64,000 bases of DNA, taken from assembly GCF_006345805.1 (NCBI RefSeq), contig NC_043008.1, forward strand, positions 49,972,001 through 50,036,000. The letters run 5' to 3'. Each line of letters begins with the position of its first letter. Position 1 is the stretch's first letter. The notes below the pieces were generated by a model that was not told where the DNA came from, did not search any database, and saw nothing but the letters and a program-made list of their open reading frames with translations. The DNA comes from Octopus sinensis. Lineage: Eukaryota. Positions 26,901-62,000 of this stretch are shown here, in pieces. A program made the translations under genes and the position numbers.

Positions 26901-29900
26901 TTCGACTAAGGTTCTTTGAGATGGTGCCCCAGCATGGCCACAGTCTAAAGACTGAAACAAGTAAAAGATAAAAGGCAAAAGATGTTCAGCTAATCTGAAA
27001 AATTTGTCCTATTGTGTTGCTGTTGTTTAGCCCCAAGTCAGCCCTGACTGAGTAGACCCATGATCAGAGACATTCCAATCATGACCATTCCAGCTCTTTC
27101 TCAGGTGTAGTGCTTCCAGGACAGCATTCTTCACGTTGTTGTTTCTTTTTATCAATGTTTGAAGAACTGGGATATAGTTGAACATAAAAGAAAATTCCTC
27201 AGTGTATTACTGGTACTTGTTATTCAGACATCAAAGAGCTGAAAGATAAACTTTGGATTGGTACCACAAACTGATTGCCTTTACATGTACAGAACTTTCA
27301 TTCTATTGAGTTGATTCCTTCCAATTCCTTAATTTTCCAGAAACAGATTGAAGAATTAACAGGGAAGAGAGAAATAAAGAAATTATAAATTCCAGGTCAA
27401 AGGTTACAAAGTCAGAGTCAAGATGATTCAGTGAGAAAGAAGAAAAAACATTTTAATAGGAAAATAACAACAACCAAAAAAGGAGCGACTAAAAATTGCA
27501 GAAAAGTGAGAAATGACAACTGGGAGGTGGACAGGGAAAATTACTGGTATTGCTTAAAGGAAGTGTGATATATCTAGACATTTTTGTAGATAGAGGCAGA
27601 ACTAAATAACTGGTGAGCACTGATCTATAAGTGTGTGTGTGTGCAAGTAGTTGTATGTTAGACAGAGTATAACCAGTAATTCAACAGACCAGCTTTTCCA
27701 CATATTGAGTTACACTGATGTGGCCTGTTTAAAGATACATCTCTGTGGAATACTCAGTCACCTTAATGTTAATTTAATAAGTTCAGTTGATTAAACAACT
27801 GGATATGGACTGTCATCATCATCATTATCATCATCATCATTTACCGTCCGCTTTCCATGCTAGCATGGGTTGGACGGGTCAACTGGGGTCTAGGAAGCCA
27901 GAAGGCTTCATCAGGCCCAGTCAGATCTGGCAGTGTTTCTACGGCTGGATGCCCTTCCTAACACCAACCACTCCGCGAGTGTAGTGGGTGTTTTTTACAT
28001 GCCACCTGCACAGGTGCCAGACAGAGCTGGCAAACGGCCACGAACGGACGGTGCTTTTACGTGTCACCGGCACGGGGGCCAGCCGAGGCTGGCAACGAAC
28101 ACGAACGGATGGTGCTTTTACGTGCCACCGACACGGGGCCAGACAGAGCTGGCAAACGGCCACGAACGGACGGTGCTTTTACGTGTCACCGGCACGGGGG
28201 CCAGCCGAGGCTGGCAACGAACACGAACGGATGGTGCTTTTACGTGCCACCGACACGGGGCCAGACAGAGCTGGCAAACGGCCACGAACGGACGGTGCTT
28301 TTACGTGTCACCGGCACGGGGGCCAGCCGAGGCTGGCAACGAACACGAACGGATGGTGCTTTTACGTGCCACCGACACGGGGCCAGACAGAGCTGGCAAA
28401 CGGCCACGAACGGACGGTGCTTTTACGTGTTACCGGCACGGGGGCCAGCCGAGGCTGGCAACAAGGAACCCGTCACCATCATCATCACCATCATCAATAA
28501 TAATCATCATCGTATACATGTACATGTGGTTGTGTATGCAGCTGTATGCATACGGGCATGTGTGTGTATGTGTGTGTATGTGCATACATAGTGGACTGTA
28601 TGTGTATATATGTGCTGACAGTGACCGTGTGCTTGTATAGATACCTCGTCTATCTCTTCACAACACGTGACTGCGGTTTTCCGTTTTTTCTTCTGAACAA
28701 GAAAATAAAATTCACATTCACATGGAGATTCATTGGAAGGAAAAAATATTAAGATTCTAACAAATTCTCATTTGAAACAACAGGAATTACATGTTCTAGA
28801 TTTAAGAGATGAGGAATTATTTACATTATTTACGCTATATGCCCACAGGCATATGGTGTAGTGGTTAAGAGCATGTACTACTAACCTCAAGATTCTGAGT
28901 TCGATTCCAAGCAGTGACCTGAACAATAACAATAATAATAATAATTATAATAACATCGAAAAATAACCTAGGAATGAGAACCCAGGTTCAAAATTTCCCC
29001 AAGACACCTGACATTGGTTATAGATCTGCTACTCGAATACAAGTTAACACTGACAACAACTCATTAGTTACTCCTTTAACGAATAATATATAAAAGCCAC
29101 AACTGTAGACCGACATAGCTGAACAGGTTAATCTTTATAACTGAGACAACCCCTAGCACTATGATACAAACACCTTGTTTTAAAGGGGTCTAAATTTTTT
29201 TTTTAAATGTTATCAATGCTCTCCCTCCTTCTTTAACTAAGCCCTAATAGGAAAGTTACTTCAATCACATGACTTGTCTGTCTCCAACAGAAAACGAAAC
29301 AGAATCTGTTGTGTTGCCATGGTGGGTGGAACTGAGGGAAATTTCACAGCAAAACAGGTCCCCCAGATTTGTCGTTGTTTAATCACACATCTGCTCAGAT
29401 TGGAGAAACCAACAATCAAAGGTGCCCCACTTATGACAGTCCCATTTTGTTCCTATGTACCCAATCCAACGAGTCCTTTCTTTTTATTGTAGCAAGGTTT
29501 GCTTTAAGTGATATTTGGCTGCTATTTCTGGCAGGCTGATTAACTACATGTTAATGGTACATTTAGTACTTCAAGAGCTTTCACAGATAGTCTTTCTCTC
29601 TTTGATGCACACACAAAGTTTCACACACACTCACTCTTCTTCTTCTTCTTCTTCTTCTTCTCCTCTCTCTCTCTCTCACACACACAATTGTGGATGTGTA
29701 TGTAAATGTGAACCGTGTTTGTGTTGAAATAAAGAACTGGATGTATTCCTGTAGTAACCTGGATATATGATATTACCAATTACCATCAGCATAATTATTC
29801 CGAGAATTTTTACATATTTTTGTTGTTGTTGGTGGTGGTGGTGGTGTTGGTGGTGGTGGTGGTTTTCATTCAACTGAAGGAAACTTTGTATGAATGAAGT

Positions 29901-34142: not shown

Positions 34143-37100
34143 ATGATTGCTGTTACTACAATAAGAGCAATGCTGATGTTGCTATGGTCATCACAAACCA
34201 ACCAAGGACCGACACAAAGGAGTCTGGTTACTTACCAGGAGTATCCACAAGTGGGTAGGATTTGAAGGATGAGTTGGTGAGTAACTCCTGCAGATCGTAA
34301 TACGTCGATACAAATGTGATATAACTGATATCTTTTATCATGATGTCTTCAACAAATACAGTCCAGGCACTAGATTAAGAAGAAAGAAAAAACAGAAATA
34401 AAAGAAAAACACAACAGACATTTTTAGGGTAAACACTTGTGCGCTGAGGGTTTTGCTTTACTCCATTTCTAAATACAAGAGTTGATGTCTCATTAAGAGA
34501 TGAAACAGCTCTATAGGTATTTTGGCCCCTTCTTATTTCTTTATTGCCCACAAGGGGCGAACAAGGGCAGACAAAGGGATTAAGTCAATTACATCGACCC
34601 CAGTGTGTAACTGGTACTTAATTTATCGATCCCGATAGGATGAAAGGCAAAGTCGACCTCGGCACAATTTGAACTCAGAACGTAGCAGCAGGCGAAATAC
34701 TGCTAAGCATTTCGCCCGGCATGCTAACGATTCGGCAAGTTTTGGCCCCTTCTGCTGTGACACAAGAGTTTCCTAGGGTCACCCACCAATGTGGCCAACA
34801 AGACTCCCGCACAACAGCATGGGCTGTGTTGAGTCAGAGGTTGTGACTCTTGGCCAGTTGTTTCTACCAACCTCAATGCTCATTCATGCTGTACCACTTC
34901 TCTCTTGAGTCGACAAATGAAAGTTCCTCAAAATAGGGAACAGTAAGGAAATTTTCATTTGCCACAAGAGCAAGCTTGCTACATTTAATAATAATAATAG
35001 TAGTAGTAGAAGTGGTGGTGGTGGTGGTGGTGGTGGTAGTAGTAGTAGTAGTAGTAATAGTAATAGTAATAGTAATAATAATAATACTAATAATAATAAT
35101 GCAGGCATTATTATTTAAAACAGTTATGTTTTCAAATTATGTCCTATCACTTTACGAATTCACTTCTAACGACTAAAAGCCAATGCTACTATTGACGAAT
35201 TTCAAAACAGGGTTAACCAGAATTCTAACCAATTTGTTTCAAATTCGATTTTTGAGACTTGGCATGGAAATATCTATAATTGAAAACTAAGAAATAATTT
35301 TTTGAAGAAGAAGAAGGAAAAAGTGGAGAGGAAGTAAAATAGCGAAACTCAAGAAACTACTTACTCTTGTTTAGTGTTGATGAGGTCAGGAAGATAGGGC
35401 AGCCTTTTTAACCGAATGATGCTGTCATAGAAGGAAGGCTGCAAAAAATGTGCAACTGCATTGGCAATCAACACAGCAACCTGCAAGATAAAAAAAATGG
35501 TAACATGTCAGCCATGATAAGTGCACTTTATTCTACCATCATCATCATCATCATCATTTTAATACTCTTTACTCTTTTACTTGTTTCAGTCATTTGACTG
35601 CGGCCATGCTGGAGCACCGCCTTTAATTGAGCAACTCGACCCCGGGACTTATTCTTTTTGTAAGCCCAGTACTTATTCTATCGGTCTCTTTTGCCGAACC
35701 GCTAAGTAACGGAGACATAAACACACCAGCATCGGTTGTCAAGCAATGCTAGGGCGACAAACACACACACATGCCTATATATATATACATATATACGACA
35801 GGCTTCTTTTCAGTTTCCGTCTACCAAATCCACTCACAAGGCTTTGGTCGGCCCAAGGCTATAGTAGAAGACACTTGCCCAAGGTGCCACGCAGTGGGAC
35901 TGAACCCGGAACCATGTGGTTGGTAAGCAAGCTACTTACCACACAGCCATTCCTGCGCCTATGGCCACTTTTCCATACTTGCATGGGTCAAACAAAGTTT
36001 ACAGACACAGATTTTTCACAGCTGGATGTCCTTCCTGTTGCCAACATTCACCTGTTTCTAAGCAAGGTAATATTTCCCCATGGCGGCAAGTTGGTAGAAA
36101 CGTTAGCATGCTAGGCAAAATGCGTAGCCGTATTTTATCTGCCGTTATGTCCTGAGTTCAAATTCCGCCAAGGTCGACTTTGCCTTTCATCCTTTTGGGG
36201 TCGATAAATTAAGTACCTATTTCTTTACTACCCACAAGGGGCTAAACACAGAGGGGACAAACGGATTAAGTTGATTACATCGACTCCAGTGCGTAACTGG
36301 TACTTAATTTATCGACCACGAAAGGATGAAAGGCAAAGTCGACCTCGGCGGAATTTGAACTCAGAACGTAACAGCAGACGAAATACTGCTAAGCATTTCG
36401 CCCAGCATGCTAACATTTCTGCCAGCTCGCTGCTTTATAAATAAGTACCAGTTACGCACTAGGGTCGATGTAATCAACTTAATCCATTTGTCTGTCCTTG
36501 TTTGTCCCCTCTGTGTTTAGCCCCTTGTGGGTAGTAAAGAAATAGATAATATTTCCCCAAGGCCAAAGATGTTTTCACAGAAGACTGGAAATGAACGACA
36601 CTGCTTGTACGACAGTGACACTCACTTACAACTATCAGGCAGTGTCAAGACAAGGAAAAAGTAACAAATGAACGAATGTCCTTATGTCCATGTGGCAGCA
36701 TGTCACTCTACCATTTCTGCTACTCTTTCACAAACATCATCACCATTTTAACATACACTTTTCCATGCCTCGTGCCTGCAAGGATCGGACAGAGGTCATT
36801 GGGGTAGATTTTTCACAACTGGATGCCCTTCCTGTCACCAACCCTATAGACAAAGTAATACTTTTCCAGTACTGGACATCGCTTTTTAGGAAAGATTGGA
36901 AGCAAGCAACACCACTTGCAGGATGGTGACTCTCATTTACAATTATCACATAATGTCAAGACAAGGACACACACATTGGACAGGTTCCTTCCAGCTTCTA
37001 CTCACAAGGCTCTGGTCAACCTGGGGATTTAGTAAAAGAGATTTGCTGAAGCTGCTGTGCAGTGGGATTGAACTTGAAATCAAGCTGTACCTTGAAATCA

Positions 37101-39633
37101 AGAGGACAGATCCTGTTGTCTACAGCTCTTTCCTGCAATCAAACCTGGACACAATGCAGCAATGGATCACAGACTGGCAACTGAAACTGGCTGTGGACAA
37201 GTGTACCACCATGCATTTTGGGAGAAAAAACCCTGCGTCCACATACTCCCTCCACAACACTGATATCAAGAAATCCTCTTGCGAGCGTGACCTAGGCATC
37301 ACTGTCAGCAGTGATTTGCGTTGGACAAAGCATATCTCTAAAATTGTCAAGAAGGCCGAGGGTGTCTTGGCATCACTCAGCAAGACTTTTGTTAGCCGCT
37401 CTCCAGCCATCTATTTAAAACTGTATACAGCTATGGTACGACCACACTTGGAATTCGCATCATCAGTTTGGAACCCCTATCTTGCTCAGAACATTGACCT
37501 CCTGGAATCTGTTCAGAGACATGCAACCAAACGCATACCCTCCATCAGACACCTACTATATTCTGAGCGCCTTGTTTCCCTGGGCATGGATTCACTGAAG
37601 CTCCGGCGTCTGGCGACGGACTTGGTAAACGCCCACAAAGTTATCAACCACCTCACCAATAACAACACTGAACACCTTTTTGATCTCCATGTGTCTAACA
37701 CACGTGGACATGCCTACAAAGTCAGAAAACAACACAGCTCCCATGACTTTCGGAAACATTTCTTCACGCTCAGAGTTGCTGAAACATGGAATAAACTGCC
37801 TGCGTCAGTTGTTGACTGCCATGACACTGCATCCTTTAAGGCCCTCATGCTTTCCGAAATCCGTTGAAACTACACCTGATTATATATGCACTTTAGATGA
37901 GTTGTAGTGCACCTGAGCACTGTACACAATGTATATTATTATTATCATGTGGCTAGGAAGCAAACCTCTTAACTGCACAGACATGCCTAATAAGGTCTCT
38001 AGCACAGGCACAAGACCTTAAATTTTGCACACCACAGACCTACGTATGTAACTGGTAGTTTATTTATATCAACCCTGAAAGGACAAAAATCAAAGTTACC
38101 CAAATAAAAAATGCAATGCAATGGCCATGGGTGGAATGCCTTGGGTCATAGATCTCACCCAGGATAAACAACAACAATAAATATAAGTGAATTTTTTATA
38201 ATAGTTTCACACATACACATATCATCATCATCATCTTCATCATTGCTGTTTAATGTCTGCTTTCCACACTGTTATAGATTGGGTGGTTCAAAAGAAACTG
38301 ACAAGCCAGAGGACTTTGCCGAATTTCAAGATCTACTTTGGGATGGTTTCTATGGGCAGATGCCATTCCTAAAACCAACCACTTTACAGAGTGACATATG
38401 CATACACACAAACATGTGTAAACATGGGAAGAGGACGTTAAAATGCTGATAAAACACACACCAATACACAAGCACACACAGTAATTTATTGTAGCCAACT
38501 AATGCAACCACAATCATTGATGTGAACCCAGGGGAGATAAATGGTAATGGAGAATCTGGAGGGATTTGAAACAGTAACAAAATTATTTCTAAGACACTAA
38601 ATTCACATACATCAACACCAGCACCTGACTGGTACTTATTTCATAAATCCAGAAGAGATTAAAGGCTAAGTCAACCTTGGTAGCGTTTCAACACAAGTTA
38701 TAACTAAATGTGTTCAAATCAATTTTCTCCAGCATTTTACCGATTCTGTGAAGTAACTATAATAACAAGAGCACTCAGAGAGCTCAAATCTCCGCCAAGG
38801 CAACACCAATGTCTTCTCAACAATTAGCCGGAGATGACTTTTAAAATGAGGATATCTGAAATAAATTCAACTGCTCTCACAAACGAGAGTACTAAAAATG
38901 AACCCGACCTATCTCAAAAATTAAGTAAAAAATAAAAACGGAAAAATGATCCAGAATCCTTGTCCGGTACTGAATCAGTCCCAAAATCTAATCAGTTTGA
39001 GGCCAAACATCCCTGAAAGTTTCATCCAAATCCATCCAGCGGTTCTTGAGATATCTTGTCCAAAGCAATCAACCAAACAAACAAATACAACTGAAAACAA
39101 TACCTTTGCCTTCGCTAAGGCAGAGGTAATAATAAGAATAACAACTTACCACAGCAGGCAACACATGGCTAATCTGACCAGTAAGTTCAAATACTATCAC
39201 AGACGTGGATATTGTACGCGTTACGCTTCCAGAGAGGGCTGCCGCACCTGAAGTGGTCATCAGAAGATTTTAAAACACATGTTGTTATATAAGACATTAT
39301 CAAAATAATACAACATTATCTGAATAGTAGAGCATTATCTAAGGAAAGGCATCCAGCCACAAAAACTATGACAAAACAGACACTGGAACTTGACACAGTT
39401 CTCTGGCTCCTTGGGTCCTGTTGAATTGTCCAACCAATGGCAGCATACAAAACAGATGATGATGATAAGAACATTATCAAAGTATTGTAGACATTAACTA
39501 AATACTAACAGTATCAAAATAAACATTATCAAAATATTGATTTCGAATTTTGGCACAAGGCCAGCAATTTTGGCAGAGGTGATAAGTCAATTACATTGAC
39601 CCCAATGATGATAGTGATGGTACTAATTTTGAG

Positions 39634-39667
<34 letters not shown>

Positions 39668-40338
39668 TCTGTCTGTCAGTGTCTGTGTGTGTGTGTCTGT
39701 GCGTGTGTGTGTCTGTGTGTCTGTGTGTATGTCTGTGTGTGTCTGTGTGTGGTGTGTGTGTGTGTGTGTACACGTGCGTGTGTGCATATGCACTTGCGTA
39801 TATACTTACCAACCACAGCATATCCTCCAGGAACTATTTTCCGAACAACATCTCCGCTACGAATTCCTTCCGGAAACCATGTAGACATACTCTCGCCGAC
39901 CAGCCTTCCAAATGCGGCCCCTTCACAGAAGACAAATCATAAATACATTTCAGAACAATCCAGAAGGACAATCATTCATTTCAGGTTAAATGTCAGGACA
40001 TGAATTTATACAGCTTTGCAGGAGATCAATACAATTCTTAAATACCTGATTGCACTAAAACTACACTGAATTGTGCCCAGTGAATTATTTAGGGTGCATA
40101 AAATTACAAATTATACAACAATTTTCGATATATATATATATATATCAAAATTATTCTTTTATTCTTTTACTTGTTTCAGTCACTTGACTGTGGCCATACT
40201 GCAGCAAAAGTGACCGATAGAATAAGTACTAGGCCTACAATGAAAAGCGGTGCTCCAGCATGGACACAGTCAAATGACTGAAGCAAGTAAAAGAATAGAA
40301 GAAACCATTTTACCCAGCTTGCTGCCATGACAATGATG

Positions 40339-46378: not shown

Positions 46379-47622
46379 CTTCATACATTGTTACGAAAAT
46401 TTAACCTTTTAGGCTACTTTCAAGCCTTCGCCATAACTTGATTTATCTTTCTATCTCTCTCTCTACAAAATTTAACCTTAGGCCAGGCTACCTCAAGCCG
46501 TAATCCTATCTCTTCCCATCTCTTCCCATCTCTTCCCATCTTTCAGCCATTGGCGGTGCGCCCCCCCCCCCCCCACCACCAATACCGATGAACACTGTTC
46601 TCACCCCCACCACCAATACCGGTGAACACTGTTCCTCACCCCCCACCACCAATACCAGTATACCCTGTCCTCACCATCTACACCGGATACGCCTTACTCA
46701 TCTACACCGGGTACGCCCTACTCCCTCTCCTCCCCCCACTACCCCTTCTCCTCATATGCTTTCACTGTGAAAAGACAAGCTGCTAGCGCCATAGCTCATC
46801 AACTGCCCACCGATCTTATGCTTCCTCCTGACACTGCCTCATTCCGACTATCCTTTAGCACCCTCCCGCCTCTAATATCCTACGTTTTATTTCTTAGGAA
46901 CCTACACCAACCCTTCCTGCCATCGTTCCTCCTTACCCCAACCTTCCCCACTGTTGCTCCCCTATATACCCGCCTCAACTGGACCCCCCCCCTCCCCAAC
47001 TCAACTCTCGAATATCTGTATTTTTCCTCTACCTAATAACGTTACTCAGTGACGATAACGAATGTCTTTATTTCTTAGGACCTACACCAACCCTTCCTGC
47101 CATCGTTCCTCCTTACCCCAACCTTCCCCACTGGTTGCCCTCCTATATTACCCGCCTCAACTGGACCTCCCCCTCCCCAACTCAACTCTAGAATATTTGT
47201 ATTTCTTTCCTCTACCTAATTACGTTACTCAGTGATGATAAATGCTGTGACTACAAAGACCCGGGCTGCTTTCTGCAGCAATTCCACATACCCCCTACTC
47301 ATTCTAAGTACCCCGGATCCCCAAAGTACCCTGGATCCCAAGTACCCCGGACCTCGTTGCCCATGTGCCGCTGACACGTTAAAATGCTCGAACCGATCGT
47401 GACGATGCCGGACCCTCCGCCCCTGTGCAGGTGGCACGTAAAAAGCACCCAATCCACTCACGGAGTGGTTGGCGTTAGGAAGGGCATCCAGCCGTAGAAA
47501 CTCTGCCAGATTCAGACTGGAGCCTGGTGCGGCCCCTGGCTTCCCAGACCCGGTCAAACCGTCCAACCCGTGCTAGCGCGGAAAGCGGACGTGTAAACGA
47601 TGATGATGATGTGATGATGATG

Positions 47623-47837: not shown

Positions 47838-50800
47838 CATACATGTGTGTGGTGGGTGGGTGTATTATATGAAATTATACAAGATATATTTTCAAATATC
47901 AAATTTCAGATAACATACATAGAATAAATAAATATAAATGCATGTAATTATAAATAAATGAACACAAAAACAAAATAAGAGTGACCCACCCAGCACTGTT
48001 ACTCATGTAATAGCCCCCACGATATGAGACTAAGCCAGAAACATTCCAAGCTGTGTATAGGCTCTTGCTTCTATCACAACCAACACATTGTTCATCGGTT
48101 TCCTCCAGTTCTTCAGTAGATCCACTAAGTTCCTCAACGGCTGTTCTTAGAACCAGGAGTTCCTAAGAGGAGAAGAGTGATAGCCCCTTGCCAATGTTTC
48201 TTCAAACCTTTTGGCATCCAGGATGCTCTGTCAAATGTAATGCTTATTGAGTCTTAGCATTTTGAATTAATCATGCATTATCTTGTAGCTTTGAGACCTC
48301 AATAATGTGTTTGCTTAGTTTTAGAGTGACATTGTAGGGTAGGCGTAAGAGGCTGAAACTAGTCAGTTTGAACATAAAACAGCTGGAATATCTGAGCTGG
48401 ATATGGCTGGTTTAAGCACCAAAGGGTTAAGCTATGTTCTTGAATGCACATGCACAAGTTTAACAAGTAAAACACAAAGTAAAAACACATGTGCACACAC
48501 CAGGTCTTCAAGATGAAATCCATTTTTTTCTAACTGAAGATGGTAACTTAAATGGATGCATATATACTTTACAAAGGAAGACAGAATTTTCTTACAAGCA
48601 AATTCCTGCACACATCCACAGAAATAAGATTAGAAGGAGAATTGATTCTTGCAGGGTTTATTGGTATTAAATTCATGATCTCTAACACCATTCTGTGAGG
48701 AAATTTCATTTGCTATCTTCTTAGTTATGACTGTGGTGTTTCAGGCGGCAAGCTGGCAGAACCGTTAGCATGCCAGGCGAAATGCTTAGCAGTATTTCGT
48801 ATGCTGTTACGTTCTGAGTTCAAATTCCGCCAAGGTCGACTTTGCCTTTCATCCTTTCGGAGTCAATAAATTAAGTACCAGTTACGCACTGGGGTCAATC
48901 TAATCGACTTAATCCCTTTGTCTGTCCTTGTTTGTCCCCTCTATGTTTAGCCCCTTGTGGGCAATAAAGAAATAAGGAAACAATAGTTTCCGAGGTCTAC
49001 TGTTGTTGCTGTTCTTATTGCATTGCTGTTATCTGTTGCCTTCTTCCTCCTCTGCCTGTCCTTACTTCCTAATCTGGAGTAAAAGCCCTCAAGTGGCTTT
49101 TACTTCCACATATGTAGCAACTGGGTTTTTTTTACTCTGCACAATCAGCTTCCCTTCCTCTTTGCACCCACAAGGTACAACTCCAGGATAATCTTGTGAT
49201 TTGGGGAGCTCTGACAAAAACTGCAGTATCTCGCCTGTCCACAGTGTATACATGTTAAGTATGATATATAGATGGCTAGCTGACAGAATCGTTAGCACGC
49301 CAGGCGAAATGCATAGTGGTATTTCGTCTGCGTTACGTTGTGAGTTCAAATTCTGCTGAGGTCGACTTTGCCTTTCATCCTTTCGGGGTCGATAAATTAA
49401 GTACCAGTTACTCACTGGGGTCGGTGTAATCGACTTAATACCTTTGTCTGTCCTTGTTTGTCCCCTCTGTGTTTAGCCCCTTGTGGGTAATAAAGAAATA
49501 GATATATAGATGGCTATAACATATTTTTATGGGTTTGAAAAAATTCCTAAGTAAAATCTACACATTTATAGAAATAATTTTTCAGTTTGTCCCCATTATA
49601 AATGACTGAGATGGAAAATAAAACTGGATATAAAATACTTACGGTCATAATGACATAGAGTAATAATGTGACATAGATATTGGTAGCCGGAGGATTCCAG
49701 TGCCTGAGGATGGCCTCTTCTTCTAAATCATCAGCTTGTCCTGTGGTCCATGTAATGTTACTGAATAGTTCGTTAATGGCTCGACGAGCAGTCAACTGCA
49801 AAACAATCAACTCATTATAAATATATGCTTTTTATTACATTTTCTTTCATTTTTTTAAAATTTTTAGAAGAGTTCTAACCAGATAGAGATGGATTTGACA
49901 AGACTGAATTCCAGACCTGATTGCTCTATTCCCTCTTTTTTCTTGTGTGTCTGTGTTTTTTTAAGAAACCTTTATAGTGGAGATGAAATATTCCTTTCCT
50001 TTATATCTACTCTATATTCTGATCAGTTTGGTATTTAATCAGCTTTAGGCGTCTTTTTCCTGGACATGTCCAGACTCCAGACTGAATTCAAACTGAAACA
50101 AAGCCTTATTTCTGAATTAGGGGGAAAGAGACATACGTATCCAAATACAAGGACCTGGAAACATTGATAACAAAAATAGGGAAGATTGGAAACAAGAACA
50201 ATCCCTTTAGTAATAAGCATCTTGAGAATGGCAAAAAAAGGTTTCACATAAATATATCAGTAAAATATCAGATAACTGTGGAATTACATTTAGTTTAGAA
50301 ATAATAGTTTATTGTTGGAAACTAGCCTGGTACTGTGTGTATAATGCACTTGAGAGCTGTGCCAGTGGAGCATAAGCTCCAGGCAGGAACTACAATGCTG
50401 GACAGGTCAAAGTATTGAGGTCAGACTACTTTGGATCACCTCATCCCAGAGGTAAAAATGGATTTACATAGGGCCAAGACTCTTACCTAGATAAAAGCAA
50501 AGTTTCAGAAGAATAGATGTCAATTCAAAACCAACAAGAGCTGAGAGCAGAAGCCCTTCCCCCAGGGAAATTCTAGATCAGTGGTTCTCAACCAGGGTTC
50601 ACATGACTCTGGGAGGGGGTGTCCAGATAAGATTTAGTTGTTAAAAATTCTGTACAATAAATCAGTTGTACTTCTACATTACACAAAATACTTTAATTTT
50701 TTTTTTATATAAAGTTCCTAATAATATTTAATTATGGGATTCTTTTTTTAACTTTAAATAGGGATCAAGGGTGTCCATAGGTAAAACATGGTTGAGAATC

Positions 50801-51319
50801 AGTGCCCAAGACACATGGATGAGGGTGTCCCCAGGAGTGGCCCCAAGAGCTCAGAGTAGGGAACAGTAAGAAAAAGTCATCAATGGCCTATGATCCATTG
50901 GCAGTGAAGGGCTTAAGTAATTCCATCCAACATTCCAACAAGTCTACCATTTTGCTGCCAAGAATAAACTTATTGGAATTTAGAATTCAAACCAAGAACT
51001 TTGCAAAGTCGTATGACATTTTTATTATAAACCATTATATTGATTTCATATTTTGGCACAAGGCCAGCAATTTCGGGGGGAGGGGTTAAACTGGCTACAT
51101 CAATCCAAGTGCTCAACCATGAAAGGATAAATGGCAAAGCTGACCTTGGTGGGATTTGAACTCAAATCATAAAGGCTGATGGAATGTTGCTTGGCATTTT
51201 GCTTGGAATGCTCATGAGTGCCAGCTCATTTGCCTGATAAACCATCAGATTAATGTCTAAAGTAAAGCATGATGTCTTTTTCCTAAAAGTGAACTGTGTA
51301 GAAAACTGTGGAGAAGCTC

Positions 51320-51359
<40 letters not shown>

Positions 51360-54300
51360 CATACACACACACACATGTACATGTGTCTATCTGTTTGCCC
51401 CACACACCCACCGCCAGTGTTGGTTCGTTTACATCCCCATGGTTTTGGCACTTCAGCAAAAGAGAACGACAGAACGGGTAGCAGACTTAATGAGTACTAG
51501 GGATCAATTTGATGGACGAGGACCCTTCAAGGTGGTATTCCAGCATGGCTGCAGTCCAATGATTGAAACAAGTAAACAATATCACCAGAACATGAATGCT
51601 ACAGCAATTAGAACTCCCGTATTTCTCAGGGGATGGTCTTTGGGATCAGCCAGTACCAAATTCTTGGCATTAACAGCTTTTGATGCCACCCCCATTCCAC
51701 TTTACCAAGAATCCATTATCAAAACTCATCAGGTGAAACCTTTTTTGTTTTTTGTTTTTTTTTTGCTGTTATTCTATACAAAATAAATAGAGTGAAATAT
51801 TGTAATTGATAGGTGATAACTACGTCAACTGACAGGAATAACCAAAGAACCACAATGAATTCTTAAAGCAGAAGACATTTGTGCATGAAAATGAAATACA
51901 ATATTGCTCATTAGGAATATGGAAATATTCTGAAATCTGAATTATTGAAATCTAATGCTAACAACCTATTTAGAACTTGTATTTATATATATTTGCTGAT
52001 ATATAATATATATATACACACACACACACACATACATCTATATCTGGTGAAATACATATAAACAAACCAGCCAACAGTAAACATCCTAAGGCAGTATACA
52101 TACATGCACCCATTATGGGTGTGTGTGTATGTTTATACATAGTTAAAGTGACGTATATATAAGGTTAAATATATAGATATACATACATGTACAGACACAC
52201 TCAAACACAGGATGGTGATGATGATGATATATATAAAAAATGTAAACTAAATGTGTTTGTGTGTTTTGTCCCACACAGCTATATATATAGCAGACACTGG
52301 AGCTCAGTGCATGTCAAAGGATGCTCATGGGACCCAAACCCACAGCTAATAAATAAACTACATGTTTATCAATTATATTGTATATGATATTCATAAACAC
52401 ATTTACATATTATATATATACAGGGTGTCCCAAAAAAATGTATACACACCTTAAATAATTGTAAATTTGTTATTCTTTGTAAGCCTAGTACTTATTCTAT
52501 CGTTCTCTTTTGCCGAACCACTATGTGTATACATTTTTTGGGACACCCTGTATAAGTGAAGTTGAACGCAGATGCTATTCAAATTTTCGACATATGTTTC
52601 GAAGACAACATTGGTATTATTCCAAAGGAATAAACGGTGTAAAATGCTATCTTCTCATCAGGAAAGAAAGGGAACCCATCTCAACAACAAGACATTACAA
52701 CAATTTTCGATGACTGCATAAATGATAAACAGAACGCTATTAAGTATTTAAAAAAAACGTTAGTAGATTCGACGTCAAAGGCAGACACTAGCAAGAGAAG
52801 GGGTAAAGAAATAATAAGTAGAGAACAAATAAAGAGGGATATATTGGTTGAAAAATATATATATGCACACAAACACCCACAGTCACGTGTGTGTGTGTGT
52901 GCAAGTGTAGAGAAAGAAACCAGAAAAAGAGAAAGACCAAGGAAGACACAGGAGACTAATCTTGAGGGGCTGGATCTGATCAAGGAGATGACAAGTGACA
53001 AAGTGTTCTGCTGGAGAAGACTCACCCAACACATGAGGAAATGGAAAAACAGGCATAAAATGATGATGAATATAGATGTACACACACACACAGAGATTCT
53101 TACAAATGAATTAATTAAGCACTAAATAGCTTTTTATTTTTTGGCCTATATTTGGTATGACTTAAACTAAACCGTTTTTTCACAGCAGATCCATCACAAG
53201 ACTGGGACAACTGTAAACAAATGTCATTTTCTTTTTTTCTGTTGACAAAAATAAAAATAAAAAAGGATCTACCTGACTGGTTTCACATCTCATTTGATTT
53301 TCATCAGAGATAAAATATATGATCTGCCCAAGGAGAGAAATACAGGTATCCCTCAACTTACATCAGTAATTAGTTCTGAGATATGCAGCTTCACTTAAAA
53401 AATCATAAAAAAAGGAAGACCATTTGACCCTTTAACATTCAGATTTCTCTATCAAATATAATCCTCATATATTCACATTGTTTTGAATTAGTCTCACATT
53501 ACCTTGTTGCTCTGAGATTTTGATGATGTGATTGTTTACTTTTAGAATAACATTGTAGGGTAGGTATAAGAGGCCAGAATTTAGCTAATTTCTACATAAA
53601 ACAGGTAGAATATTCTGGTTGGATATGGCCAGTTTAAATGCTGGAGGGTTGAGAAATTTATTACCTCTTATCTGTTTGAATAAATGGTTTGTACATATTT
53701 TCACATGTATTATTTTTTTTTTTTTCTACTTCAGGATTGGGTTTTATGCTTTTTTAATCTTTATGCTTTTAAATATGTTCACCGAGATCAATGTAAAGTT
53801 AGATAAATCAACTGAAGGTCAGGGCTATTTTTCTAATTAATTTCTTTAAAAAAAAGATGTCAACTCGAAACAACATACATTGAGGCATACTTGTATAATT
53901 AACAGCTATGTACAATCACTAAATGAAATGGGTGGGTCAAATGATATTTGAAGAGAATCAAATTAGATATGAAACCAGTCGAGAAGACTTTTTTTAAAAT
54001 TCTGATTACAGAAACAAATAAAAAGACATTCATTTTTTTTCTCATTTGCCAGGTGTGGAACAAGGAGCAGTGACCATTGGCCATCATCACTCATCGAAAA
54101 CAGGTGAAAATGATGCTATTAATTTTTTTATTTAAACTACTTCAAGTCAACACATTCATGAATGACATGAGCAGAGAGGGAGGTTTCAGAGGGAAGTCAT
54201 TCTGAAAAGGAAGGACTGGGATGGTGCTTAGTGCAGATACAAAGGGGCTGGACACAACAGGGGTGAAAAGAGGAGAAGAAGGAAAAGTAACTTGGGTGTC

Positions 54301-57300
54301 TTCTGTCAGAAAAGGGTTTATCATATATTATATTAAAGATATACAAAAATATATACATATATATACATACCTGTCCAGCAAAATATTGTCCAAGACCAGG
54401 TGGGAATGTTAATGTAGATATTAAAATAGCTATTATTCCAGGATAAATAAATCGACTGAAATGATAAAACAGATCAAATATTATTATTATTATTATTTAT
54501 TATTATTATTATTGAGTGAGAGAGCAGTGCATGCCATCAAAGTGACATATACGAAGCCCAGTATACCCATCATGACTACCCATCTGATAAGGGTACACTA
54601 GGCACATGCATCACAACCATATGTGCGCGACATGGTGATCTCATATCAAGATAAACAGCACATGACCTTGCAGGTGGGGCCCAGTTAGAATTTTCTTCAG
54701 GTCGAGTAACCCTTCCTGCTCAAAAGGTCCCTGAATAAGAGTTGTTTAAGGATGTTGAAAGAACCACACATGTTTCCAGAGGTGAATTATTCAAACAACA
54801 AAGAATCCCTCTCAACACATGGCTATGATGCTCCCCCACTACTTCTGCTCGTGATCAGAGATGCACATATCGTCAGCCACTAAGGGACATGCTCAACTGG
54901 TTAAGGTCAAACAACTGACAAGCAAATCTGTGGTATTGAGCAGAATATTTACTGTAGCCCATCTTCTATACCAAGACAAAACAATGTACATGATAACACT
55001 TCCAATCAGTTAAGATCAGAAGCCATGAGAGCCACTGCCTGGTACTGCATCAGGGCATTTACTGCCTGGTACTGCATTATTATTATTATTATTACTATTA
55101 CTATTATTATTATTATTATTATTAAGGTAGCAAGCTGGCAGGATTGCCAGCATGCTGGGGGGAAATGCTCAGCGGCATTTCATCCATCCTTATGCTCTGA
55201 GTTCAAATTCTGCCAGGGCCAACTTTGCCTTTCATCCTTTCAGGGTCAATAAATGAAGTACCAGTGAATCACTGGGGATCAATGTAATCGACTAGTCCCT
55301 TCCCCACAAATTTCAGGCTTTGTGCCTTTAGTAGTAAGGATTATTATTATTACTATTATTGTTGTTGTTGTCTCTTTACAGTCTGAGTTCAAAACCCTTT
55401 GAGGTCAAATTTGACTTCCACCCCTCTGGGTCTTCCATCAAGCTATACCAAAATATTACCCTACTTGGAGACAGGTAGGGGTTGGTAACAGGAGGAACAT
55501 CCCATCACAGAAAATCTGCCTCAACAAATTCTTTCCAATCCATGTAACCATGGGAAAGTGGACATTTAAATGATGACGATATCACGTATTCATATATACT
55601 AATCAATCTTGTCTAATCAATGTTTAATTCTAAAACATTGAAATGCATTTTATTGTTTCAGAAGCAAGAATTACTTCCCTTGATCTAAGATAAAACATAT
55701 TTTAAAAACAAACAATAAATTTCATGTCGGACTGTTGAACACACAAGGAAAAGTTTCTTAGAAAAAAAGAGATTATGCTTACTTTTTCTGTAGAAAAGCA
55801 GACATCCTTTTGTGTCTTCTGGTGAAGAGAATTATTTTTCTATGAAGTAAAATGAAGAGAGACCCACCTAAGCCACATGCTACACTGAAATAGAAAAAAA
55901 AAAGGGATTATACATCAGGCCAAAACAGAGATTATCAAAGCAAGATTATTCAACCTGCTAGAAATAATAAGCAAAATCTACCTCAAATCAAGTCCTACAG
56001 TGTTTAAGAAGTCAAACCACATTGATTAATGTAATCGTTAAGCTTTTGTTTCTAACTTACCTGAATTCTCATCTAAACACATGGCTGGCTGCAAGTACTT
56101 GGCTGCAAGTACTTGCCATTGAAAAGACCTCAAAAGGCTAAAATGCATCTGGTGTTCTTGCTGGATACTGCTGTGATGAGTTTTCATCTTTTTCCCTGAT
56201 ACTTATTACGTTTTCTACATTGTAAGTCCATGAGATTTGTTATCTAAGGACAAATGCCATACTAACTGGCCAGTCAACTGTGTACATGCATTATGTATGA
56301 TACATAGATTGCTATTTTAATCTAATGTTACCTTAATTGCTTATCCTGGGTCATAAGATTACATTTAATTTTCATTTTTTAAAAATTAATATTTAAATTA
56401 GGAGACAAAAAATAAAAAGTCCCTCACCTCCCACTGCTTCCCTTGGTCCTCAAAACCCACATAAAATTTTCCACTCCCCACTTTGAGGAGCACTGATGTA
56501 AAAGGTCCCTTGTTGGATCAAACTTTGCGATGTAGAAGCTGCTACTGTTTAGCCCAGGGTCACAACCCTAACCAAGAAAACTTATGACCAAAGACTTTCC
56601 AATTGTGATCATCCCATCTTTCATTCAAACATAATGTATCTAGGACTATCCTACCCAATATATCTTTTTTTTTTTTTTTGGTCCACAGCCCCAGGTCAAT
56701 CTGGCCTATGACCTAAGACTTGCCAACCATGGCCATAACAATCTAATAGATTATATCTGAGATTATTTGCAGTCCTTTCATTTAAAAAAAAAAAAACAGT
56801 AACAATTAAGGAAAATTTGTCTGCTATTTCTAGTGAATTAAGGATCTATGGACAGGCTCCTTCATTAGCTTGACTGCACAATAATTTACAAGAACATGTG
56901 ATGGTCACTAGATCCATGTCATTGTATTCAAACAATTCATAAACATAAACAACATGCAATAATATATATATATACATATACACACACATATATATACATA
57001 TACACATATATATATGTGTGTATATATGATTTATTTTGACAAGTTGTTTCCAAACTGTATTGTAAACAGAGAGCAGTGAATTAACGGAATCATCACAAGC
57101 ATCAGACAGAATGTCTTGTGGTGTTTATTGAAGCTCTACACTCAGAGTTCAAATCTGCCAAGGTCAACTTTGCCTTCCATCATTTTGGAAATAAAACAAT
57201 TAAGTATCATTTAAGAACTGGACTGAATTCTTCCTCCCTTTCTCTCTTTCACTCTCTCTCTCCATCTCACTCTCCCATAATTGGCCATCACCAACAAGAT

Positions 57301-59002: not shown

Positions 59003-62000
59003 TTCTGTATGTGCACATCTATGTACAGCTGATTGCGCATATTTCTGTGCGTATATATATCTGTAGCTGTATATTTGTGCATAATAAGATAACACAAGTA
59101 TGTGTGTACGTATAACCAGTTGCATGAAACGCAAGCATCCTATATTTAGTAGTAAACCTATACTCTGAGCTGGATTTATAGATTACTGCTCCTACTTAAA
59201 AACGCTGTAATGTACCTACTTAACAAAGCCAGTAATTACAGCACAAAGTGGATTATAATTAAATGGATAAGTATAAAACGAAGTTACTAAGTTTTTATGA
59301 AAGAATAACCAGTGCCACTGTCGTCATCGTCATCATCTGGTTGGGCAACTTTTTGGGGGTAAAAGCAAATACAGGAGGATCAGTTAATTAGGATTTTATT
59401 CAACATGTTCCTCTCTCAGATCCTCACACTTGTTGCAGTGGTCCTTCAGTTTTTCTAAGGCCTGTAAAAGAACTCAGAAGGTTGAGCCTCCAACCAGGCC
59501 TTTCGTGATACCCTTAAAGCCAGGAACTTTTCAGCAACCCCTTGTATATATGTATGTGTGTATCTAGTGTGTGTGTGTGTTTGTCGTCTAGTTCACTGCT
59601 TGACAACTGGTGTTGGTTTGTTTACATCCACATAACTTAGTGCTTCAGCAAAAGCACTAATGGAGTAAGTACTAAGCTTATAAAAAGTAAAAAGTACTGG
59701 GATCGATTTGTTAGGCTAAACCTGTAAAGATGGAGCCCTAGCATGGCCACAGTCCAAATAAAGGACAAAAGATATTAGCAGGTTTTTTTTTGGGGGGGGG
59801 GGGGGTCTTGAATGAACCGAACACATAAAGAGGGACCACCTAGTCTAGTTTCAAGGAGTTGTATGACACAGAGTTACAGACAACATACAAAATTCATAGA
59901 AGAGAGTGTTTGTGTGACAGTTTTACTAGAAATACCAGCCAAATCTCTTTCAGCTCACACCATACCACTTTAAAAAGAGAAGGTAACGTTGGACAGTGTA
60001 GTCTTTGGTATACAAAAATTCATAGCAGTCTGGTTCCTGAAAAATGGTCACAGGTGAAATTCCTGTGAGCATATATATCTGCTCAGACAGAGTGAATGTG
60101 GAGCTATAGATCACAACCCACCATAATAACAACCTGCTAGAAATAGCAGCCAAATCTCTCTCAAATCACACAACATTCTTCGAAATAGGAAGATTACGTT
60201 AATTAGTGTAGTGCTAGAGAGAGAAGGGAGGGAGAAATACACACACACACACACACACACCATCATGGATGGCTGGCTGGCTGGATGGATGGATGGATAT
60301 AAGAATACAGTCGTATTTACCCAATTCCTGCAAAAATGATCAATTCAAGAGCATCAAATGGCACTTCTGTTCTTAAAGTTGTCTTAAATAAAGCTGTTAT
60401 GGTTTCTGCAACAAGAAAATATTTCAAACGAATGACAGAATATTGAAAATAACAGAAAAAAAATATTGGGATTCATCCAGTTTCCACCTACTGAATTCAC
60501 ATACCAGTTCAGAGCTATAACAGAAGGACACTTGCCCAATCAAGTTATAACAGACAAAGAAGTCATAGACCAGCTGCCTACCACTTCCCATGGAGAATTA
60601 GATAGGAAGAGATCTCCACCTCAGCATGATCACAAGACCTGTCATGAACCAGTTCTTGGACCATGGCCATATATATATATTAGGTCTGCCGCTACTGTCC
60701 ACAACCAAGTCTTGACAAGTCTGTTTCTTCGCCTGCACCCATTCCTCCACACCCACCCCATTTCAAAGAAGAGTATGTGAACGTTCTTGAAGAGGTTGGC
60801 TTTTTTGACGTTCATGCTCAGCATCATTTTAATATCCACTTTTCCATGCTGGCATGAGTCGGACAGAACCTGCTGAAGCATATTTTTCTACAGCTGGATG
60901 CTCTTCCTGTCACCAACCCTCATTTGTTTCCAAGTAAGGTAATATTTCCCCATGACCAGAATTGTCTTTCACAGAAGGCGAGAAATGAAACCACATCACT
61001 TCTAGGATGGTGATGCTCATTTACAATCATCAGGTGATATCAAAACAAGGGCACACACAAACGCATACATATATATATACATATGAGAAGCTTCTTTCAG
61101 TTTCCCTCAGCCAAATCCATTCACAAGACTTTGGTTGGCCCAGGGCTATAGTAGAATATATTTACCCCAAGATACCACACACTGAGACTGAACTCAAAAC
61201 CACATGGTTGGAGAAACAAGCTTCTTGACCTCGCGGCCATGCCTGTGCACAAAAATGGCAACCTGCCCAAGAGACCACTCTCATGAAAATAATTATTAAT
61301 CCCTTTAATTCTCTGTGGTCCTTTATAGTGTTCCCCCTACCTTCCCCAAGGAAAGTTATGGGAAGAAATAGCTGATGAAAAAATAAAGAAGTGTTTAGTT
61401 GAGAAACTTACCTTCGTCTTTAAACCAAAATGCCAATAACCTAAAAATAAGTGCCCCACACACAGCAGAGAAAAACCCTCTCCAGTAGTTTCTGACAGCA
61501 AAAAATGTGGCTGTTACTTCAATACTGAACAATACCCCTGGTCAGAAGAATTAAGAAAGAAAGAAAAAACAATCAATGTTGTTAAATGAGGTCTCAGATG
61601 AAAACAATAGGGAGTTTTTACTGATCAAAATAAGCTTTTGAAAAGTTCTTCACAGTTCACAACACATCTATTGAGAAGTATAACAACAAACAAAGGACCA
61701 TTCTCCACAACAGGGGTTTTCCTCAACAACCATCAACATCATCATCATCATCTGCCTAGTTTTTATGTCTGCTTTTATCCATGCTGGCATGGGTTGAGTG
61801 AGACTTATTGAAGCAGTATTCTACAGTTAGATGCTCCTCTTACTGCTAACCTTTACCTATAATGCAAGTAAGGGGTGTTTTTTTTTCACACATGTTGAAA
61901 CTGCTGAGTTATTTAGACATATTGGTATTGTTTTTACAAGGGACCAACAGAATTCCATTAACCACATGGTATCAATGCATAGTCAGGTGAAAATAAACAG

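What the first reader, a model, noticed from the sequence alone, without database searches (positions are those of the whole stretch)
52585..52665. Canonical-core hammerhead ribozyme in the sense strand of the chloride-channel pre-mRNA
Seen: the minus strand has every catalytic core nucleotide (CUGAUGA, GAAAC, GUC), a 12-bp stem II with two G.U pairs, a self-complementary AUAU in stem III and a 4-bp stem I. It lies in the intron between exons 54371-54455 and 49643-49795; predicted cleavage is between 52589 and 52588. Known: minimal type I hammerheads with palindromic stem III are typical of Penelope-like elements and metazoan retrozymes, and often need dimerisation to cleave. Inference: if active, it would cut the channel pre-mRNA co-transcriptionally. 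A lone copy with a short stem I may be silent.
Basis: partly seen in the sequence, partly recalled or inferred. Interest (0 to 1): 0.75.

Follow-up and report, generated by a model that had tools for sequence, protein, structure and literature searches.

The report
Lone hammerhead ribozyme motif in intron
A complete but structurally weak hammerhead self-cleaving RNA motif sits, as a single copy, in the sense strand of an intron of a CLC-2-like chloride channel gene; it is most likely a stray retroelement relic of a kind already known by the thousands in invertebrate genomes, and probably does little to the host transcript.

Summary
It has CUGAUGA, a 12-bp helix II with two G.U pairs and a G10.1-C11.1 base, GAAA, a palindromic ACAUAUGU helix III, GUC, and a 4-bp helix I. 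The predicted cut is between 52589 and 52588.

It is the only hit in the window with two descriptors of my own. In 1500 dinucleotide shuffles no hit came close to it. Rfam Hammerhead_1 aligns it full length, but at 20.7 bits against a gathering score of 34, because helix II carries a 50-nt insert.

The host is a minus-strand CLC-2-like gene, and the motif lies in the sense strand of its 4575-nt intron.

The window shows no second copy, no tandem unit, no reverse transcriptase or endonuclease remnant nearby, and no unusual self-pairing of the surrounding 300 nt. Helices I and III are predicted to be almost unformed in the monomer.

My best reading is a solitary minimal type I hammerhead of the Penelope-like-element or retrozyme lineage, probably silent or feeble. 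Paralogs, orthologs and cleavage could not be tested. That the source is an octopus is unverified. This is a new member of a known kind, of modest interest.

The parts
52662..52665 (-). Helix I, 5' strand (UUUC). It pairs with GAAA at 52588-52585: one C-G and three U-A pairs.
   Evidence: Pairing probability is at most 0.16 in isolation and below 0.01 with flanks of 60 nt or more. An upstream second UUUC offers a competing register.
52655..52661 (-). Catalytic box C3-A9, CUGAUGA.
   Evidence: It aligns to the Rfam RF00163 consensus CUGAcGA.
52601..52654 (-). Helix II. Twelve-bp stem (arms 52654-52643 and 52612-52601, two G.U pairs, G10.1-C11.1 at its base) closing a 30-nt loop with an inner 7-bp hairpin at 52633-52617.
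   Evidence: Mean pair probability is 0.8-0.97 in every context tested. This is the only robust structure in the centroid folds.
52597..52600 (-). Catalytic box G12 A13 A14 A15.1 (GAAA).
52590..52597 (-). Helix III. A15.1-U16.1 and C15.2-G16.2 around AUAU. The whole ACAUAUGU is a palindrome that can form an 8-bp intermolecular duplex.
   Evidence: Monomer pair probability is 0.02-0.04. The dimer minimum-energy fold forms the 8-bp duplex, 6.8 kcal/mol better than two monomers.
52588..52589 (-). Predicted scissile bond, 3' of C17 (52589) and 5' of G1.1 (52588). The triplet is GUC.
   Evidence: Inferred from hammerhead numbering. No cleavage data exist.
52585..52588 (-). Helix I, 3' strand (GAAA).
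52555..52854 (-). Hypothesised insertion block of about 300 nt that carries the motif. It is bounded by (AT)5 at 52864-52855 upstream and, once the MITE is removed, by a (TA)n run downstream.
   Evidence: Sequence reading. It is unique within the window. It is not unusually self-paired, z = -0.09. The boundaries are inference only.
49796..54370 (-). Host intron (4575 nt) of the CLC-2-like gene. The motif lies about 1.7 kb from the 5' splice site and about 2.8 kb from the 3' splice site.
54371..54455 (-). Upstream exon ([28 protein letters not shown]).
49643..49795 (-). Downstream exon ([16 protein letters not shown]...LLLYVIMT).

Best explanation
This is a solitary, retroelement-derived minimal type I hammerhead motif of the kind carried in the terminal repeats of Penelope-like elements and their non-autonomous retrozyme derivatives. 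It was left in the sense strand of an intron of a CLC-2-like chloride channel gene.

Shown: the full catalytic core, the three-helix type I topology, a very stable helix II, the intronic sense location, and the absence of a partner copy in the window.

Inferred, step 1: the motif arrived by retrotransposition, within a fragment of about 300 nt lying between (TA)n tracts.

Inferred, step 2: as a monomer in the pre-mRNA it rarely adopts the active fold. Helix I is only 4 weak pairs, helix III only 2 pairs plus a tetraloop, and no loop-loop tertiary contact is recognisable.

Inferred, step 3: cleavage would need two transcripts to pair through the palindromic ACAUAUGU, or help from host factors. 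Any cutting is therefore slow and rare, with no material effect on channel mRNA output.
For: The core and helices are verified.

Rfam Hammerhead_1 aligns the site end to end, model positions 1-45 of 45. Its consensus helix III, ACGcgCGU, is mirrored here by ACAUAUGU.

Chance is unlikely. This is the only hit in the window, and shuffles give nothing comparable. A scan of the JGI metagenome collection for the primary-sequence pattern alone returned 3 loci, none of which can form helix II.

Several features I did not impose match the published hallmarks of PLE minimal hammerheads (PMC4209133): G10.1-C11.1, palindromic 15.2-16.2 with loop 3, a long helix II, and a helix I of 4 bp. The same paper reports that most such motifs occur as dispersed single copies from truncated elements. 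It also reports that single motifs show no detectable self-cleavage and that dimers cleave only weakly.

If the window is cephalopod, Penelope-like elements are an abundant repeat class there (PMC13282606, PMC8967140). Molluscs carry thousands of type I hammerheads (PMC7229834). In Xenopus about 43% of retrozyme copies overlap introns, and monomers are evenly dispersed (bioRxiv 10.64898/2026.07.22.740005).

Thermodynamics: helix II probability is about 0.9, helix I below 0.01 in context, and helix III 0.02-0.04. The dimer forms the 8-bp helix III.
Against: No paralog was found in the 64-kb window. None could be searched for in the source genome.

No reverse transcriptase or GIY-YIG remnant appears on either strand of 51900-53700.

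There is no tandem or decayed second unit.

The 300-nt block is not self-paired like retrozyme RNAs.

The Rfam score is below gathering.

A 12-bp helix II with a 30-nt structured loop is longer than the 7-8 bp described for PLE minimal hammerheads. The usual unpaired nucleotide between A9 and G10.1 is absent (against PMC4209133).

A perfectly intact core and stems in an otherwise anonymous fragment would be unexpected for an old neutral relic. That leaves room for a young insertion or for selection.

Nearest-neighbour folding ignores the tertiary stabilisation of the hammerhead junction, so 'inactive' is a prediction, not a result.
Confidence: 0.65

Rival explanations
1. The motif is retroelement-derived as above, but it is measurably active in vivo. 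Nascent transcripts pair through the palindromic helix III, or chaperones stabilise the fold, and a fraction of CLC-2-like pre-mRNAs is cut inside the intron. Splicing still completes because the exons stay tethered to the polymerase.
For: The core is complete, with the favoured GUC triplet and the G10.1-C11.1 pair.

The dimer fold forms an 8-bp helix III with a gain of 6.8 kcal/mol.

A distal 5-bp closure of helix I (AGAUG 52681-52677 with CAUCU 52574-52570) lowers the hammerhead-compatible fold from -14.2 to -18.5 kcal/mol.

A single axolotl motif with a helix III stem of two base pairs and a tetraloop still cleaved 22% in one hour (PMC7229834).

Introns cut by a slow hammerhead are spliced normally (Dye et al. 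2006, as summarised in PMC2995048).
Against: There is no partner copy in cis. Dimerisation would therefore need two separate pre-mRNAs of a gene that is probably expressed at low level.

Helix I probability is below 0.01 in context.

No loop 1-loop 2 tertiary contacts are recognisable.

PLE minimal hammerheads cleaved poorly even as dimers, and mostly at non-physiological Mg2+ (PMC4209133).
Confidence: 0.15
2. Chance convergence. A pre-existing 54-nt hairpin in AT-rich intronic DNA happens to be flanked by CUGAUGA and GAAAC-AUAU-GUC. There is no descent from any ribozyme family and no activity.
For: It is a single copy with no relatives found.

Rfam is below gathering. Scaled from 106 nt to the full 64-kb window, the E-value would be about 3.

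Real sequence in this window is far richer in hairpins than shuffles are, with thousands of flush 12-bp pairings, mostly microsatellite. Shuffle-based p-values are therefore optimistic.

In a genome of gigabase size, scanned in many windows, rare coincidences do occur.
Against: Among 1500 shuffles no hit had helix II above 5 bp, a palindromic helix III insert of 4 nt or more, or G10.1-C11.1. The real site has all three.

My extrapolation from these rates gives well under one such site per gigabase-scale genome, even after allowing a 100-fold hairpin excess.

The features that match are exactly those reported as non-random hallmarks of natural minimal hammerheads (PMC4209133).
Confidence: 0.12
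3. A domesticated intronic ribozyme. The motif is kept by selection in this intron and regulates processing of the chloride channel pre-mRNA, for example isoform choice or transcript dosage. This would be analogous to the conserved intronic hammerheads of amniote RECK, CTCL and DTNB.
For: It lies in the sense strand within an intron.

The core and all stems are perfectly intact, although the surrounding 300 nt show no other recognisable feature.

A precedent exists (PMC6155905).
Against: Conservation could not be tested.

The amniote examples are canonical type I motifs with conserved tertiary interactions (legend of Figure 4E, PMC6155905). Here helices I and III are marginal and no loop-loop contacts are recognisable.

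A Tc1/mariner-type MITE has inserted 38 nt downstream of the cut site, with no sign that the neighbourhood is constrained.

Introns are a common neutral resting place for such copies (bioRxiv 10.64898/2026.07.22.740005).
Confidence: 0.05

Closest known systems
Minimal type I hammerheads of Penelope-like elements (Cervera and de la Pena 2014, PMC4209133)
   Same: The catalytic core, the type I topology, a longer-than-canonical helix II, a helix I of 4-5 bp with poorly defined loop 1, the G10.1-C11.1 pair, and a very short helix III with palindromic 15.2-16.2 and loop 3 implying action as a dimer. Most are found as dispersed single copies.
   Different: Helix II here is 12 bp and closes a 30-nt loop with its own 7-bp hairpin, against 7-8 bp in the published families. 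The usual unpaired nucleotide between A9 and G10.1 is missing. No PLE terminal repeat, reverse transcriptase or GIY-YIG endonuclease is recognisable nearby. Membership of a multi-copy family is untested.
Metazoan non-LTR retrozymes (PMC7229834; bioRxiv 10.64898/2026.07.22.740005)
   Same: A type I hammerhead with a weak palindromic helix III. The candidate unit of about 300 nt falls within the 170-400 nt range. Molluscs carry thousands of copies. Monomeric copies are dispersed, and many lie in introns.
   Different: There is no tandem array or second unit. The 300-nt block is not highly self-paired. No circular RNA evidence exists.
Rfam RF00163 Hammerhead_1 (type I)
   Same: Full-length alignment to the model, with every conserved core position and a palindromic helix III.
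   Different: It scores 20.7 bits against a gathering score of 34, and has a 50-nt insertion where the model expects about 10 nt in helix II. It is not reported at all when 601 nt or the whole window are searched.
Conserved intronic hammerheads of amniotes (RECK, CTCL, DTNB; reviewed in PMC6155905)
   Same: A type I hammerhead in the sense strand of an intron of a protein-coding gene, thought to descend from retroelement ribozymes.
   Different: Those are conserved across amniotes and have conserved tertiary interactions (legend of Figure 4E, PMC6155905). Here conservation is untested and the fold is marginal.

Membership tests
Hammerhead ribozyme, type I | Conserved core: C3 U4 G5 A6 N7 G8 A9, G12 A13 A14, the A15.1-U16.1 pair, and H17 at the cleavage site. 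| tested here: met
   CUGAUGA at 52661-52655, GAAA at 52600-52597, U16.1 at 52590 and C17 at 52589.
Hammerhead ribozyme, type I | Three helices around the core, with helix I open-ended. | tested here: met
   Helix I is 4 bp, helix II is 12 bp, and helix III is 2 bp plus a tetraloop. Only helix II is thermodynamically robust.
Hammerhead ribozyme, type I | Score at or above the Rfam RF00163 gathering threshold. | tested here: not met
   There is no hit at gathering for the whole window. The score is 20.7 bits against 34 when 106 nt are searched.
Hammerhead ribozyme, type I | Loop 1-loop 2 tertiary contacts that give activity at physiological Mg2+. | tested here: inconclusive
   There is no closed loop 1. 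Loop 2 is 30 nt with an inner hairpin. No tool here models these contacts.
Hammerhead ribozyme, type I | Site-specific self-cleavage that leaves 2',3'-cyclic phosphate and 5'-OH ends. | not testable with these tools
   This needs in vitro transcription or RNA end mapping.
PLE minimal hammerhead (PMC4209133) | A long helix II and a short helix I of 4-5 bp. | tested here: met
   12 bp and 4 bp.
PLE minimal hammerhead (PMC4209133) | The G10.1-C11.1 pair, and palindromic 15.2-16.2 with loop 3. | tested here: met
   G at 52654 pairs with C at 52601. CAUAUG at 52596-52591 is a palindrome.
PLE minimal hammerhead (PMC4209133) | An unpaired nucleotide between A9 and G10.1. | tested here: not met
   Helix II starts directly after A9 (bulge 0).
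PLE minimal hammerhead (PMC4209133) | Location in a terminal repeat flanking an RT plus GIY-YIG open reading frame, or demonstrable descent from one. | tested here: not met
   No Pfam domain was found in any of six frames of 51900-53700 at E up to 1. The only RT fragment in the window is a CR1-like LINE at 36890-37864 on the other strand. Solo truncated copies are the published norm, so this does not exclude descent.
PLE minimal hammerhead (PMC4209133) | Member of a multi-copy genomic family that shows covariation. | not testable with these tools
   The source genome is not in any collection offered. The window holds no paralog. Protein-index look-ups and searches found nothing usable.
Metazoan non-LTR retrozyme | Tandem repeats of about 170-400 nt, each with a hammerhead. 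| tested here: not met
   No second motif. No decayed repeat in the flanks: alignment scores are below the shuffle mean.
Metazoan non-LTR retrozyme | A highly self-paired unit RNA. | tested here: not met
   The 299-nt block folds at -43.1 kcal/mol, z = -0.09 against shuffles.
Domesticated intronic hammerhead (amniote type) | Sense-strand position in an intron. | tested here: met
Domesticated intronic hammerhead (amniote type) | Conservation in the orthologous intron across species. | not testable with these tools
   Only a related transcript was retrievable (L004, Logan SRR21372858). No orthologous genomic intron was available.

The most novel reading that the evidence does not exclude
The motif is an exapted, selectively maintained intronic ribozyme of a mollusc-like CLC-2-type channel gene. 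Its unusually long, structured helix II serves as a regulatory platform, for example for protein binding or for transcript-transcript dimerisation through the palindromic helix III, and this gates cleavage and so tunes channel pre-mRNA processing. That would be an invertebrate counterpart of the amniote intronic hammerheads.
Probability: 0.04. Interest if true: 0.7.

Novelty: new member of a known kind. Interest (0 to 1): 0.3.

Why it matters
If the motif is simply a solo retroelement hammerhead, it adds one more example to a class already counted in the thousands per genome in many invertebrates and lower vertebrates. It matters mainly as an annotation point: an intron of this channel gene carries ribozyme-bearing retroelement debris.

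Two things would raise its value. The first is a family of hammerheads with a 12-bp helix II and a structured 30-nt loop, which would extend the known architecture of PLE and retrozyme ribozymes. The second is conservation in the orthologous intron or real cleavage in vivo, which would give an invertebrate case of a host-gene intronic ribozyme, so far documented mainly in amniotes.

Tried and rejected
1. Rfam at gathering on the whole window, and at E up to 10 on 601 nt, gave no hammerhead. The hit appears only with 106 nt. I take this as a filter effect plus the insert penalty. The other matches there (WsnRNA46, MIR7993, U6 and others) are weak matches well below their gathering scores.

2. 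Paralog search within the window by blastn with word sizes 7 and 6, and by tblastn, found nothing for 52555-52860.

3. I looked for a decayed tandem unit by local alignment of the flanks. Scores were below the shuffle mean. The shared UCGAAAAUU I noticed by eye at about 52700 is therefore not evidence of a repeat.

4. I used accidental ORFs across the motif as handles to reach other copies in the large protein collections. The word-index search gave no candidate. Exact look-ups of the 67-aa and 136-aa ORFs are not on record. The exhaustive HMMER search gave one hit, P0006, a tandem-repeat protein. Its score is the sum of four copies of one roughly 22-residue match, and it does not conserve the codons opposite the ribozyme core. 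I rejected it as chance.

5. Pattern scans for CTGATGAG-N40-64-CGAAACATATGTC gave 3 metagenome loci from one unrelated family with no helix II, and 0 viral contigs.

6. I tried to identify the species and fetch orthologous introns through the channel protein. No cephalopod protein was returned. The best named relative is the bivalve Solemya velum, at 76% identity over half of the query, and every protein listed is shorter than about 670 residues. L004 is a transcript, not genomic DNA.

7. A second core-like string at 53307-53270 (CUGAUGA...GAAAC-CAGUC) has no helix II. Its inverted-repeat partner lacks CUGAUGA. I rejected it.

8. No tRNA-like pol III promoter or SINE head was found around the motif.

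9. The idea that the 300-nt block is a rod-like retrozyme RNA was rejected.
Full report
**Observation.** On the minus strand the sequence reads as follows:

5'-UUUC CUGAUGA GAAGAUAGCAUU [30 nt] AAUGUUGUCUUC GAAA C AUAU G UC / GAAA-3', coordinates 52665-52585.

All invariant hammerhead positions are present:
- C3-A9 at 52661-52655.
- G12-A14 and A15.1 at 52600-52597.
- U16.1 at 52590 and C17 at 52589.

Helix II is 12 uninterrupted pairs with two G.U wobbles. It begins with the conserved G10.1-C11.1 pair. Its 30-nt loop contains a further 7-bp hairpin, UUAUUCC-UUU-GGAAUAA.

Helix III is A15.1-U16.1 plus C15.2-G16.2 around AUAU, so ACAUAUGU is a perfect palindrome. Helix I is C-G plus three U-A pairs.

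**More than chance?** I used two descriptors of my own.
- A lenient descriptor finds only this site on both strands of the window. It finds 0.2 sites per dinucleotide-preserving shuffle, and none of those had helix II of 8 bp or more in 400 shuffles.
- A minimal-hammerhead descriptor that demands a palindromic helix III insert again finds only this site. It gave 21 hits in 1500 shuffles. None had helix II above 5 bp, a palindromic insert of 4 nt or more, or G10.1-C11.1.

Real sequence here is much richer in hairpins than shuffles are, mostly because of microsatellites, so shuffle p-values are optimistic. Even allowing a 100-fold excess, my extrapolation puts a coincidence of this quality at well below one per gigabase-scale genome.

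A scan of the JGI metagenome collection for the primary-sequence boxes alone, with the same spacing, returned three loci of one unrelated family. None can form helix II.

**Rfam.** The whole-window search at gathering thresholds finds nothing. A 601-nt search at E up to 10 also finds nothing. When only 106 nt are given, Hammerhead_1 (RF00163) aligns from model position 1 to 45 over 52667-52583 on the minus strand. The score is 20.7 bits, E 0.0045 for that small search, against a gathering score of 34. Every core position matches, and the model's palindromic helix III, ACGcgCGU, corresponds to ACAUAUGU here. The shortfall comes with a 50-nt insertion where the model expects about 10 nt in helix II. 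The curated test is therefore formally not passed, but the alignment supports the structural reading.

**Genomic context.**
- Exons 54371-54455 and 49643-49795 on the minus strand have AG/GT borders and join in frame.
- The joined peptide matches human CLC-2 residues 363-441 at E 2.6e-19.
- Guided by a related transcript (L004), nine coding segments of the same gene map on the minus strand from 55838 to 32877.
- The motif is therefore in the sense strand of a 4575-nt intron.
- The closest named proteins are molluscan (Solemya velum, 76% over half of the query) and CLC-2 of other animals.

**Neighbourhood.**
- A 130-bp MITE with perfect inverted ends and TA duplications sits at 52421-52550, 38 nt downstream of the cut site.
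- With the MITE removed, the motif-bearing block of about 300 nt (52555-52854) lies between an (AT)5 run and a (TA)n run. This would suit an insertion into a TA microsatellite, but it is weak evidence in such AT-rich DNA.

**What could not be found.**
- No similar sequence elsewhere in the window.
- No second hammerhead, even with a relaxed descriptor.
- No decayed tandem unit in the flanks.
- No protein domain in any frame of 51900-53700.
- No tRNA-like head.
- The only reverse transcriptase fragment in the window is a CR1-like LINE, 15 kb away on the other strand.
- The 299-nt block is not unusually structured, z = -0.09, unlike the rod-like retrozyme RNAs.
- Attempts to reach other copies through accidental ORFs in the large protein collections failed.

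**Would it work?** In nearest-neighbour folding, helix II is formed with probability 0.8-0.97 in every context. Helix I has probability of at most 0.16 in the bare 81-mer and below 0.01 once 60-150 nt of pre-mRNA flank it. Helix III has probability 0.02-0.04. The full hammerhead fold lies 3.5 kcal/mol above the fold with helix II alone.

Two copies of the RNA are predicted to pair through ACAUAUGU into an 8-bp helix III, gaining 6.8 kcal/mol. Without a second copy in cis, however, this needs two separate transcripts. A possible distal closure of helix I (AGAUG 52681-52677 with CAUCU 52574-52570) helps somewhat, but it is not statistically notable. These calculations ignore the tertiary structure of the junction, so they are predictions only.

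Published experiments point the same way:
- Single PLE minimal hammerheads showed no detectable self-cleavage, and dimers only low activity, mostly at non-physiological Mg2+ (PMC4209133).
- Single axolotl motifs cleaved 6-22% in an hour (PMC7229834).
- Even if this intron were cut slowly, splicing may proceed, as shown for introns cleaved by a slow hammerhead (Dye et al. 2006, as summarised in PMC2995048).

**Comparison with known families.** The architecture matches the minimal type I hammerheads of Penelope-like elements (PMC4209133). The matching features are a long helix II, a 4-5 bp helix I with ill-defined loop 1, G10.1-C11.1, palindromic 15.2-16.2 with loop 3, and occurrence mostly as dispersed single motifs from truncated elements.

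It departs from that family in two ways. It lacks the unpaired base between A9 and G10.1, and its helix II is much longer (12 bp plus a structured 30-nt loop, against 7-8 bp).

Background from the literature:
- Retrozymes, now argued to be non-autonomous PLE derivatives, are common in molluscs (PMC7229834).
- In Xenopus they often lie in introns, and as monomers they are evenly dispersed (bioRxiv 10.64898/2026.07.22.740005).
- Penelope-like elements are an abundant repeat class in octopus genomes (PMC13282606, PMC8967140).

The retrozyme-defining tandem arrangement and strong self-pairing are not met here. The conserved intronic hammerheads of amniotes (PMC6155905) are the functional precedent. 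Here conservation is untested, no loop-loop contacts are recognisable, and helices I and III are marginal.

**Verdict.** The most likely explanation (0.65) is a solitary retroelement-derived minimal hammerhead that is silent or nearly so in the channel pre-mRNA.

The alternatives are:
- the same relic with low but real activity (0.15);
- chance convergence on a hairpin (0.12);
- an exapted regulatory ribozyme (0.05).

It is a new member of a known kind. Its only unusual trait is the extended helix II. Interest is modest unless genome-wide paralogs, orthologous conservation or RNA end mapping show otherwise.

Noticed in passing
window 52421-52550 (with TA at 52551-52552 and 52419-52420): A 130-bp MITE with perfect terminal inverted repeats (CAGGGTGTCCCAAAAAA...) and TA target duplications, inserted 38 nt downstream of the predicted cleavage site. 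Its internal part recurs at 35649-35707, 40204-40244, 26850-26900, 22884-22911, 59635-59693 and 51452-51489. The sub-threshold Rfam matches to WsnRNA46 and MIR7993 lie over its inverted-repeat hairpin.
   Followed up: partly
window about 52920-53060, plus strand: The translation ...[37 protein letters not shown]... resembles, from memory, the conserved C-terminal tail of RTE/BovB-type LINE ORF2. It is followed by a (CA)n run at 53075-53095. It is part of a 160-codon open frame (52643-53122) whose start reaches into helix II of the hammerhead. No Pfam match.
   Followed up: no
window 36890-37864, plus strand: A 325-codon open frame with a weak RVT_1 match (E 0.0034). Its C-terminal motif [12 protein letters not shown]...SLKLRR..., from memory, is typical of CR1-like LINEs. 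This is a LINE 3' fragment inside another intron of the channel gene.
   Followed up: partly
window 23375-23656, plus strand: An open frame reading ...[27 protein letters not shown]...VHKWL.... From memory this looks like the C-terminus of a mariner-type transposase. No Pfam hit at E up to 0.1.
   Followed up: no
window 7590-7970, 27894-28637, 36672-36926, 47228-47572: Open frames that share the peptide string ...[13 protein letters not shown]... on both strands. This indicates a repeated element family, probably SINE-like, scattered through the introns.
   Followed up: no
window 53270-53307 (minus strand), with inverted-repeat partner at 53944-53995: A second string with CUGAUGA...GAAAC-CAGUC boxes lies in one arm of a 52-nt inverted-repeat pair that is 77% complementary. 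It has no helix II, and the partner arm lacks CUGAUGA, so it is not a hammerhead.
   Followed up: yes
locus L004 (Logan SRR21372858 contig, 1164 nt): A transcript of the orthologous channel from a related species, 80-97% identical per exon at the protein level. It reads through the exon junctions but carries a one-base frame shift after ...LLLYIIMT relative to the expected protein.
   Followed up: partly
protein P0006 (195 aa): A tandem-repeat protein with a 52-residue unit, from an unknown source. It was the only hit of the antisense ORF across the motif. Its score is the sum of four copies of one weak match, and the core codons are not conserved, so I judged it chance. Its DNA could not be fetched.
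   Followed up: partly
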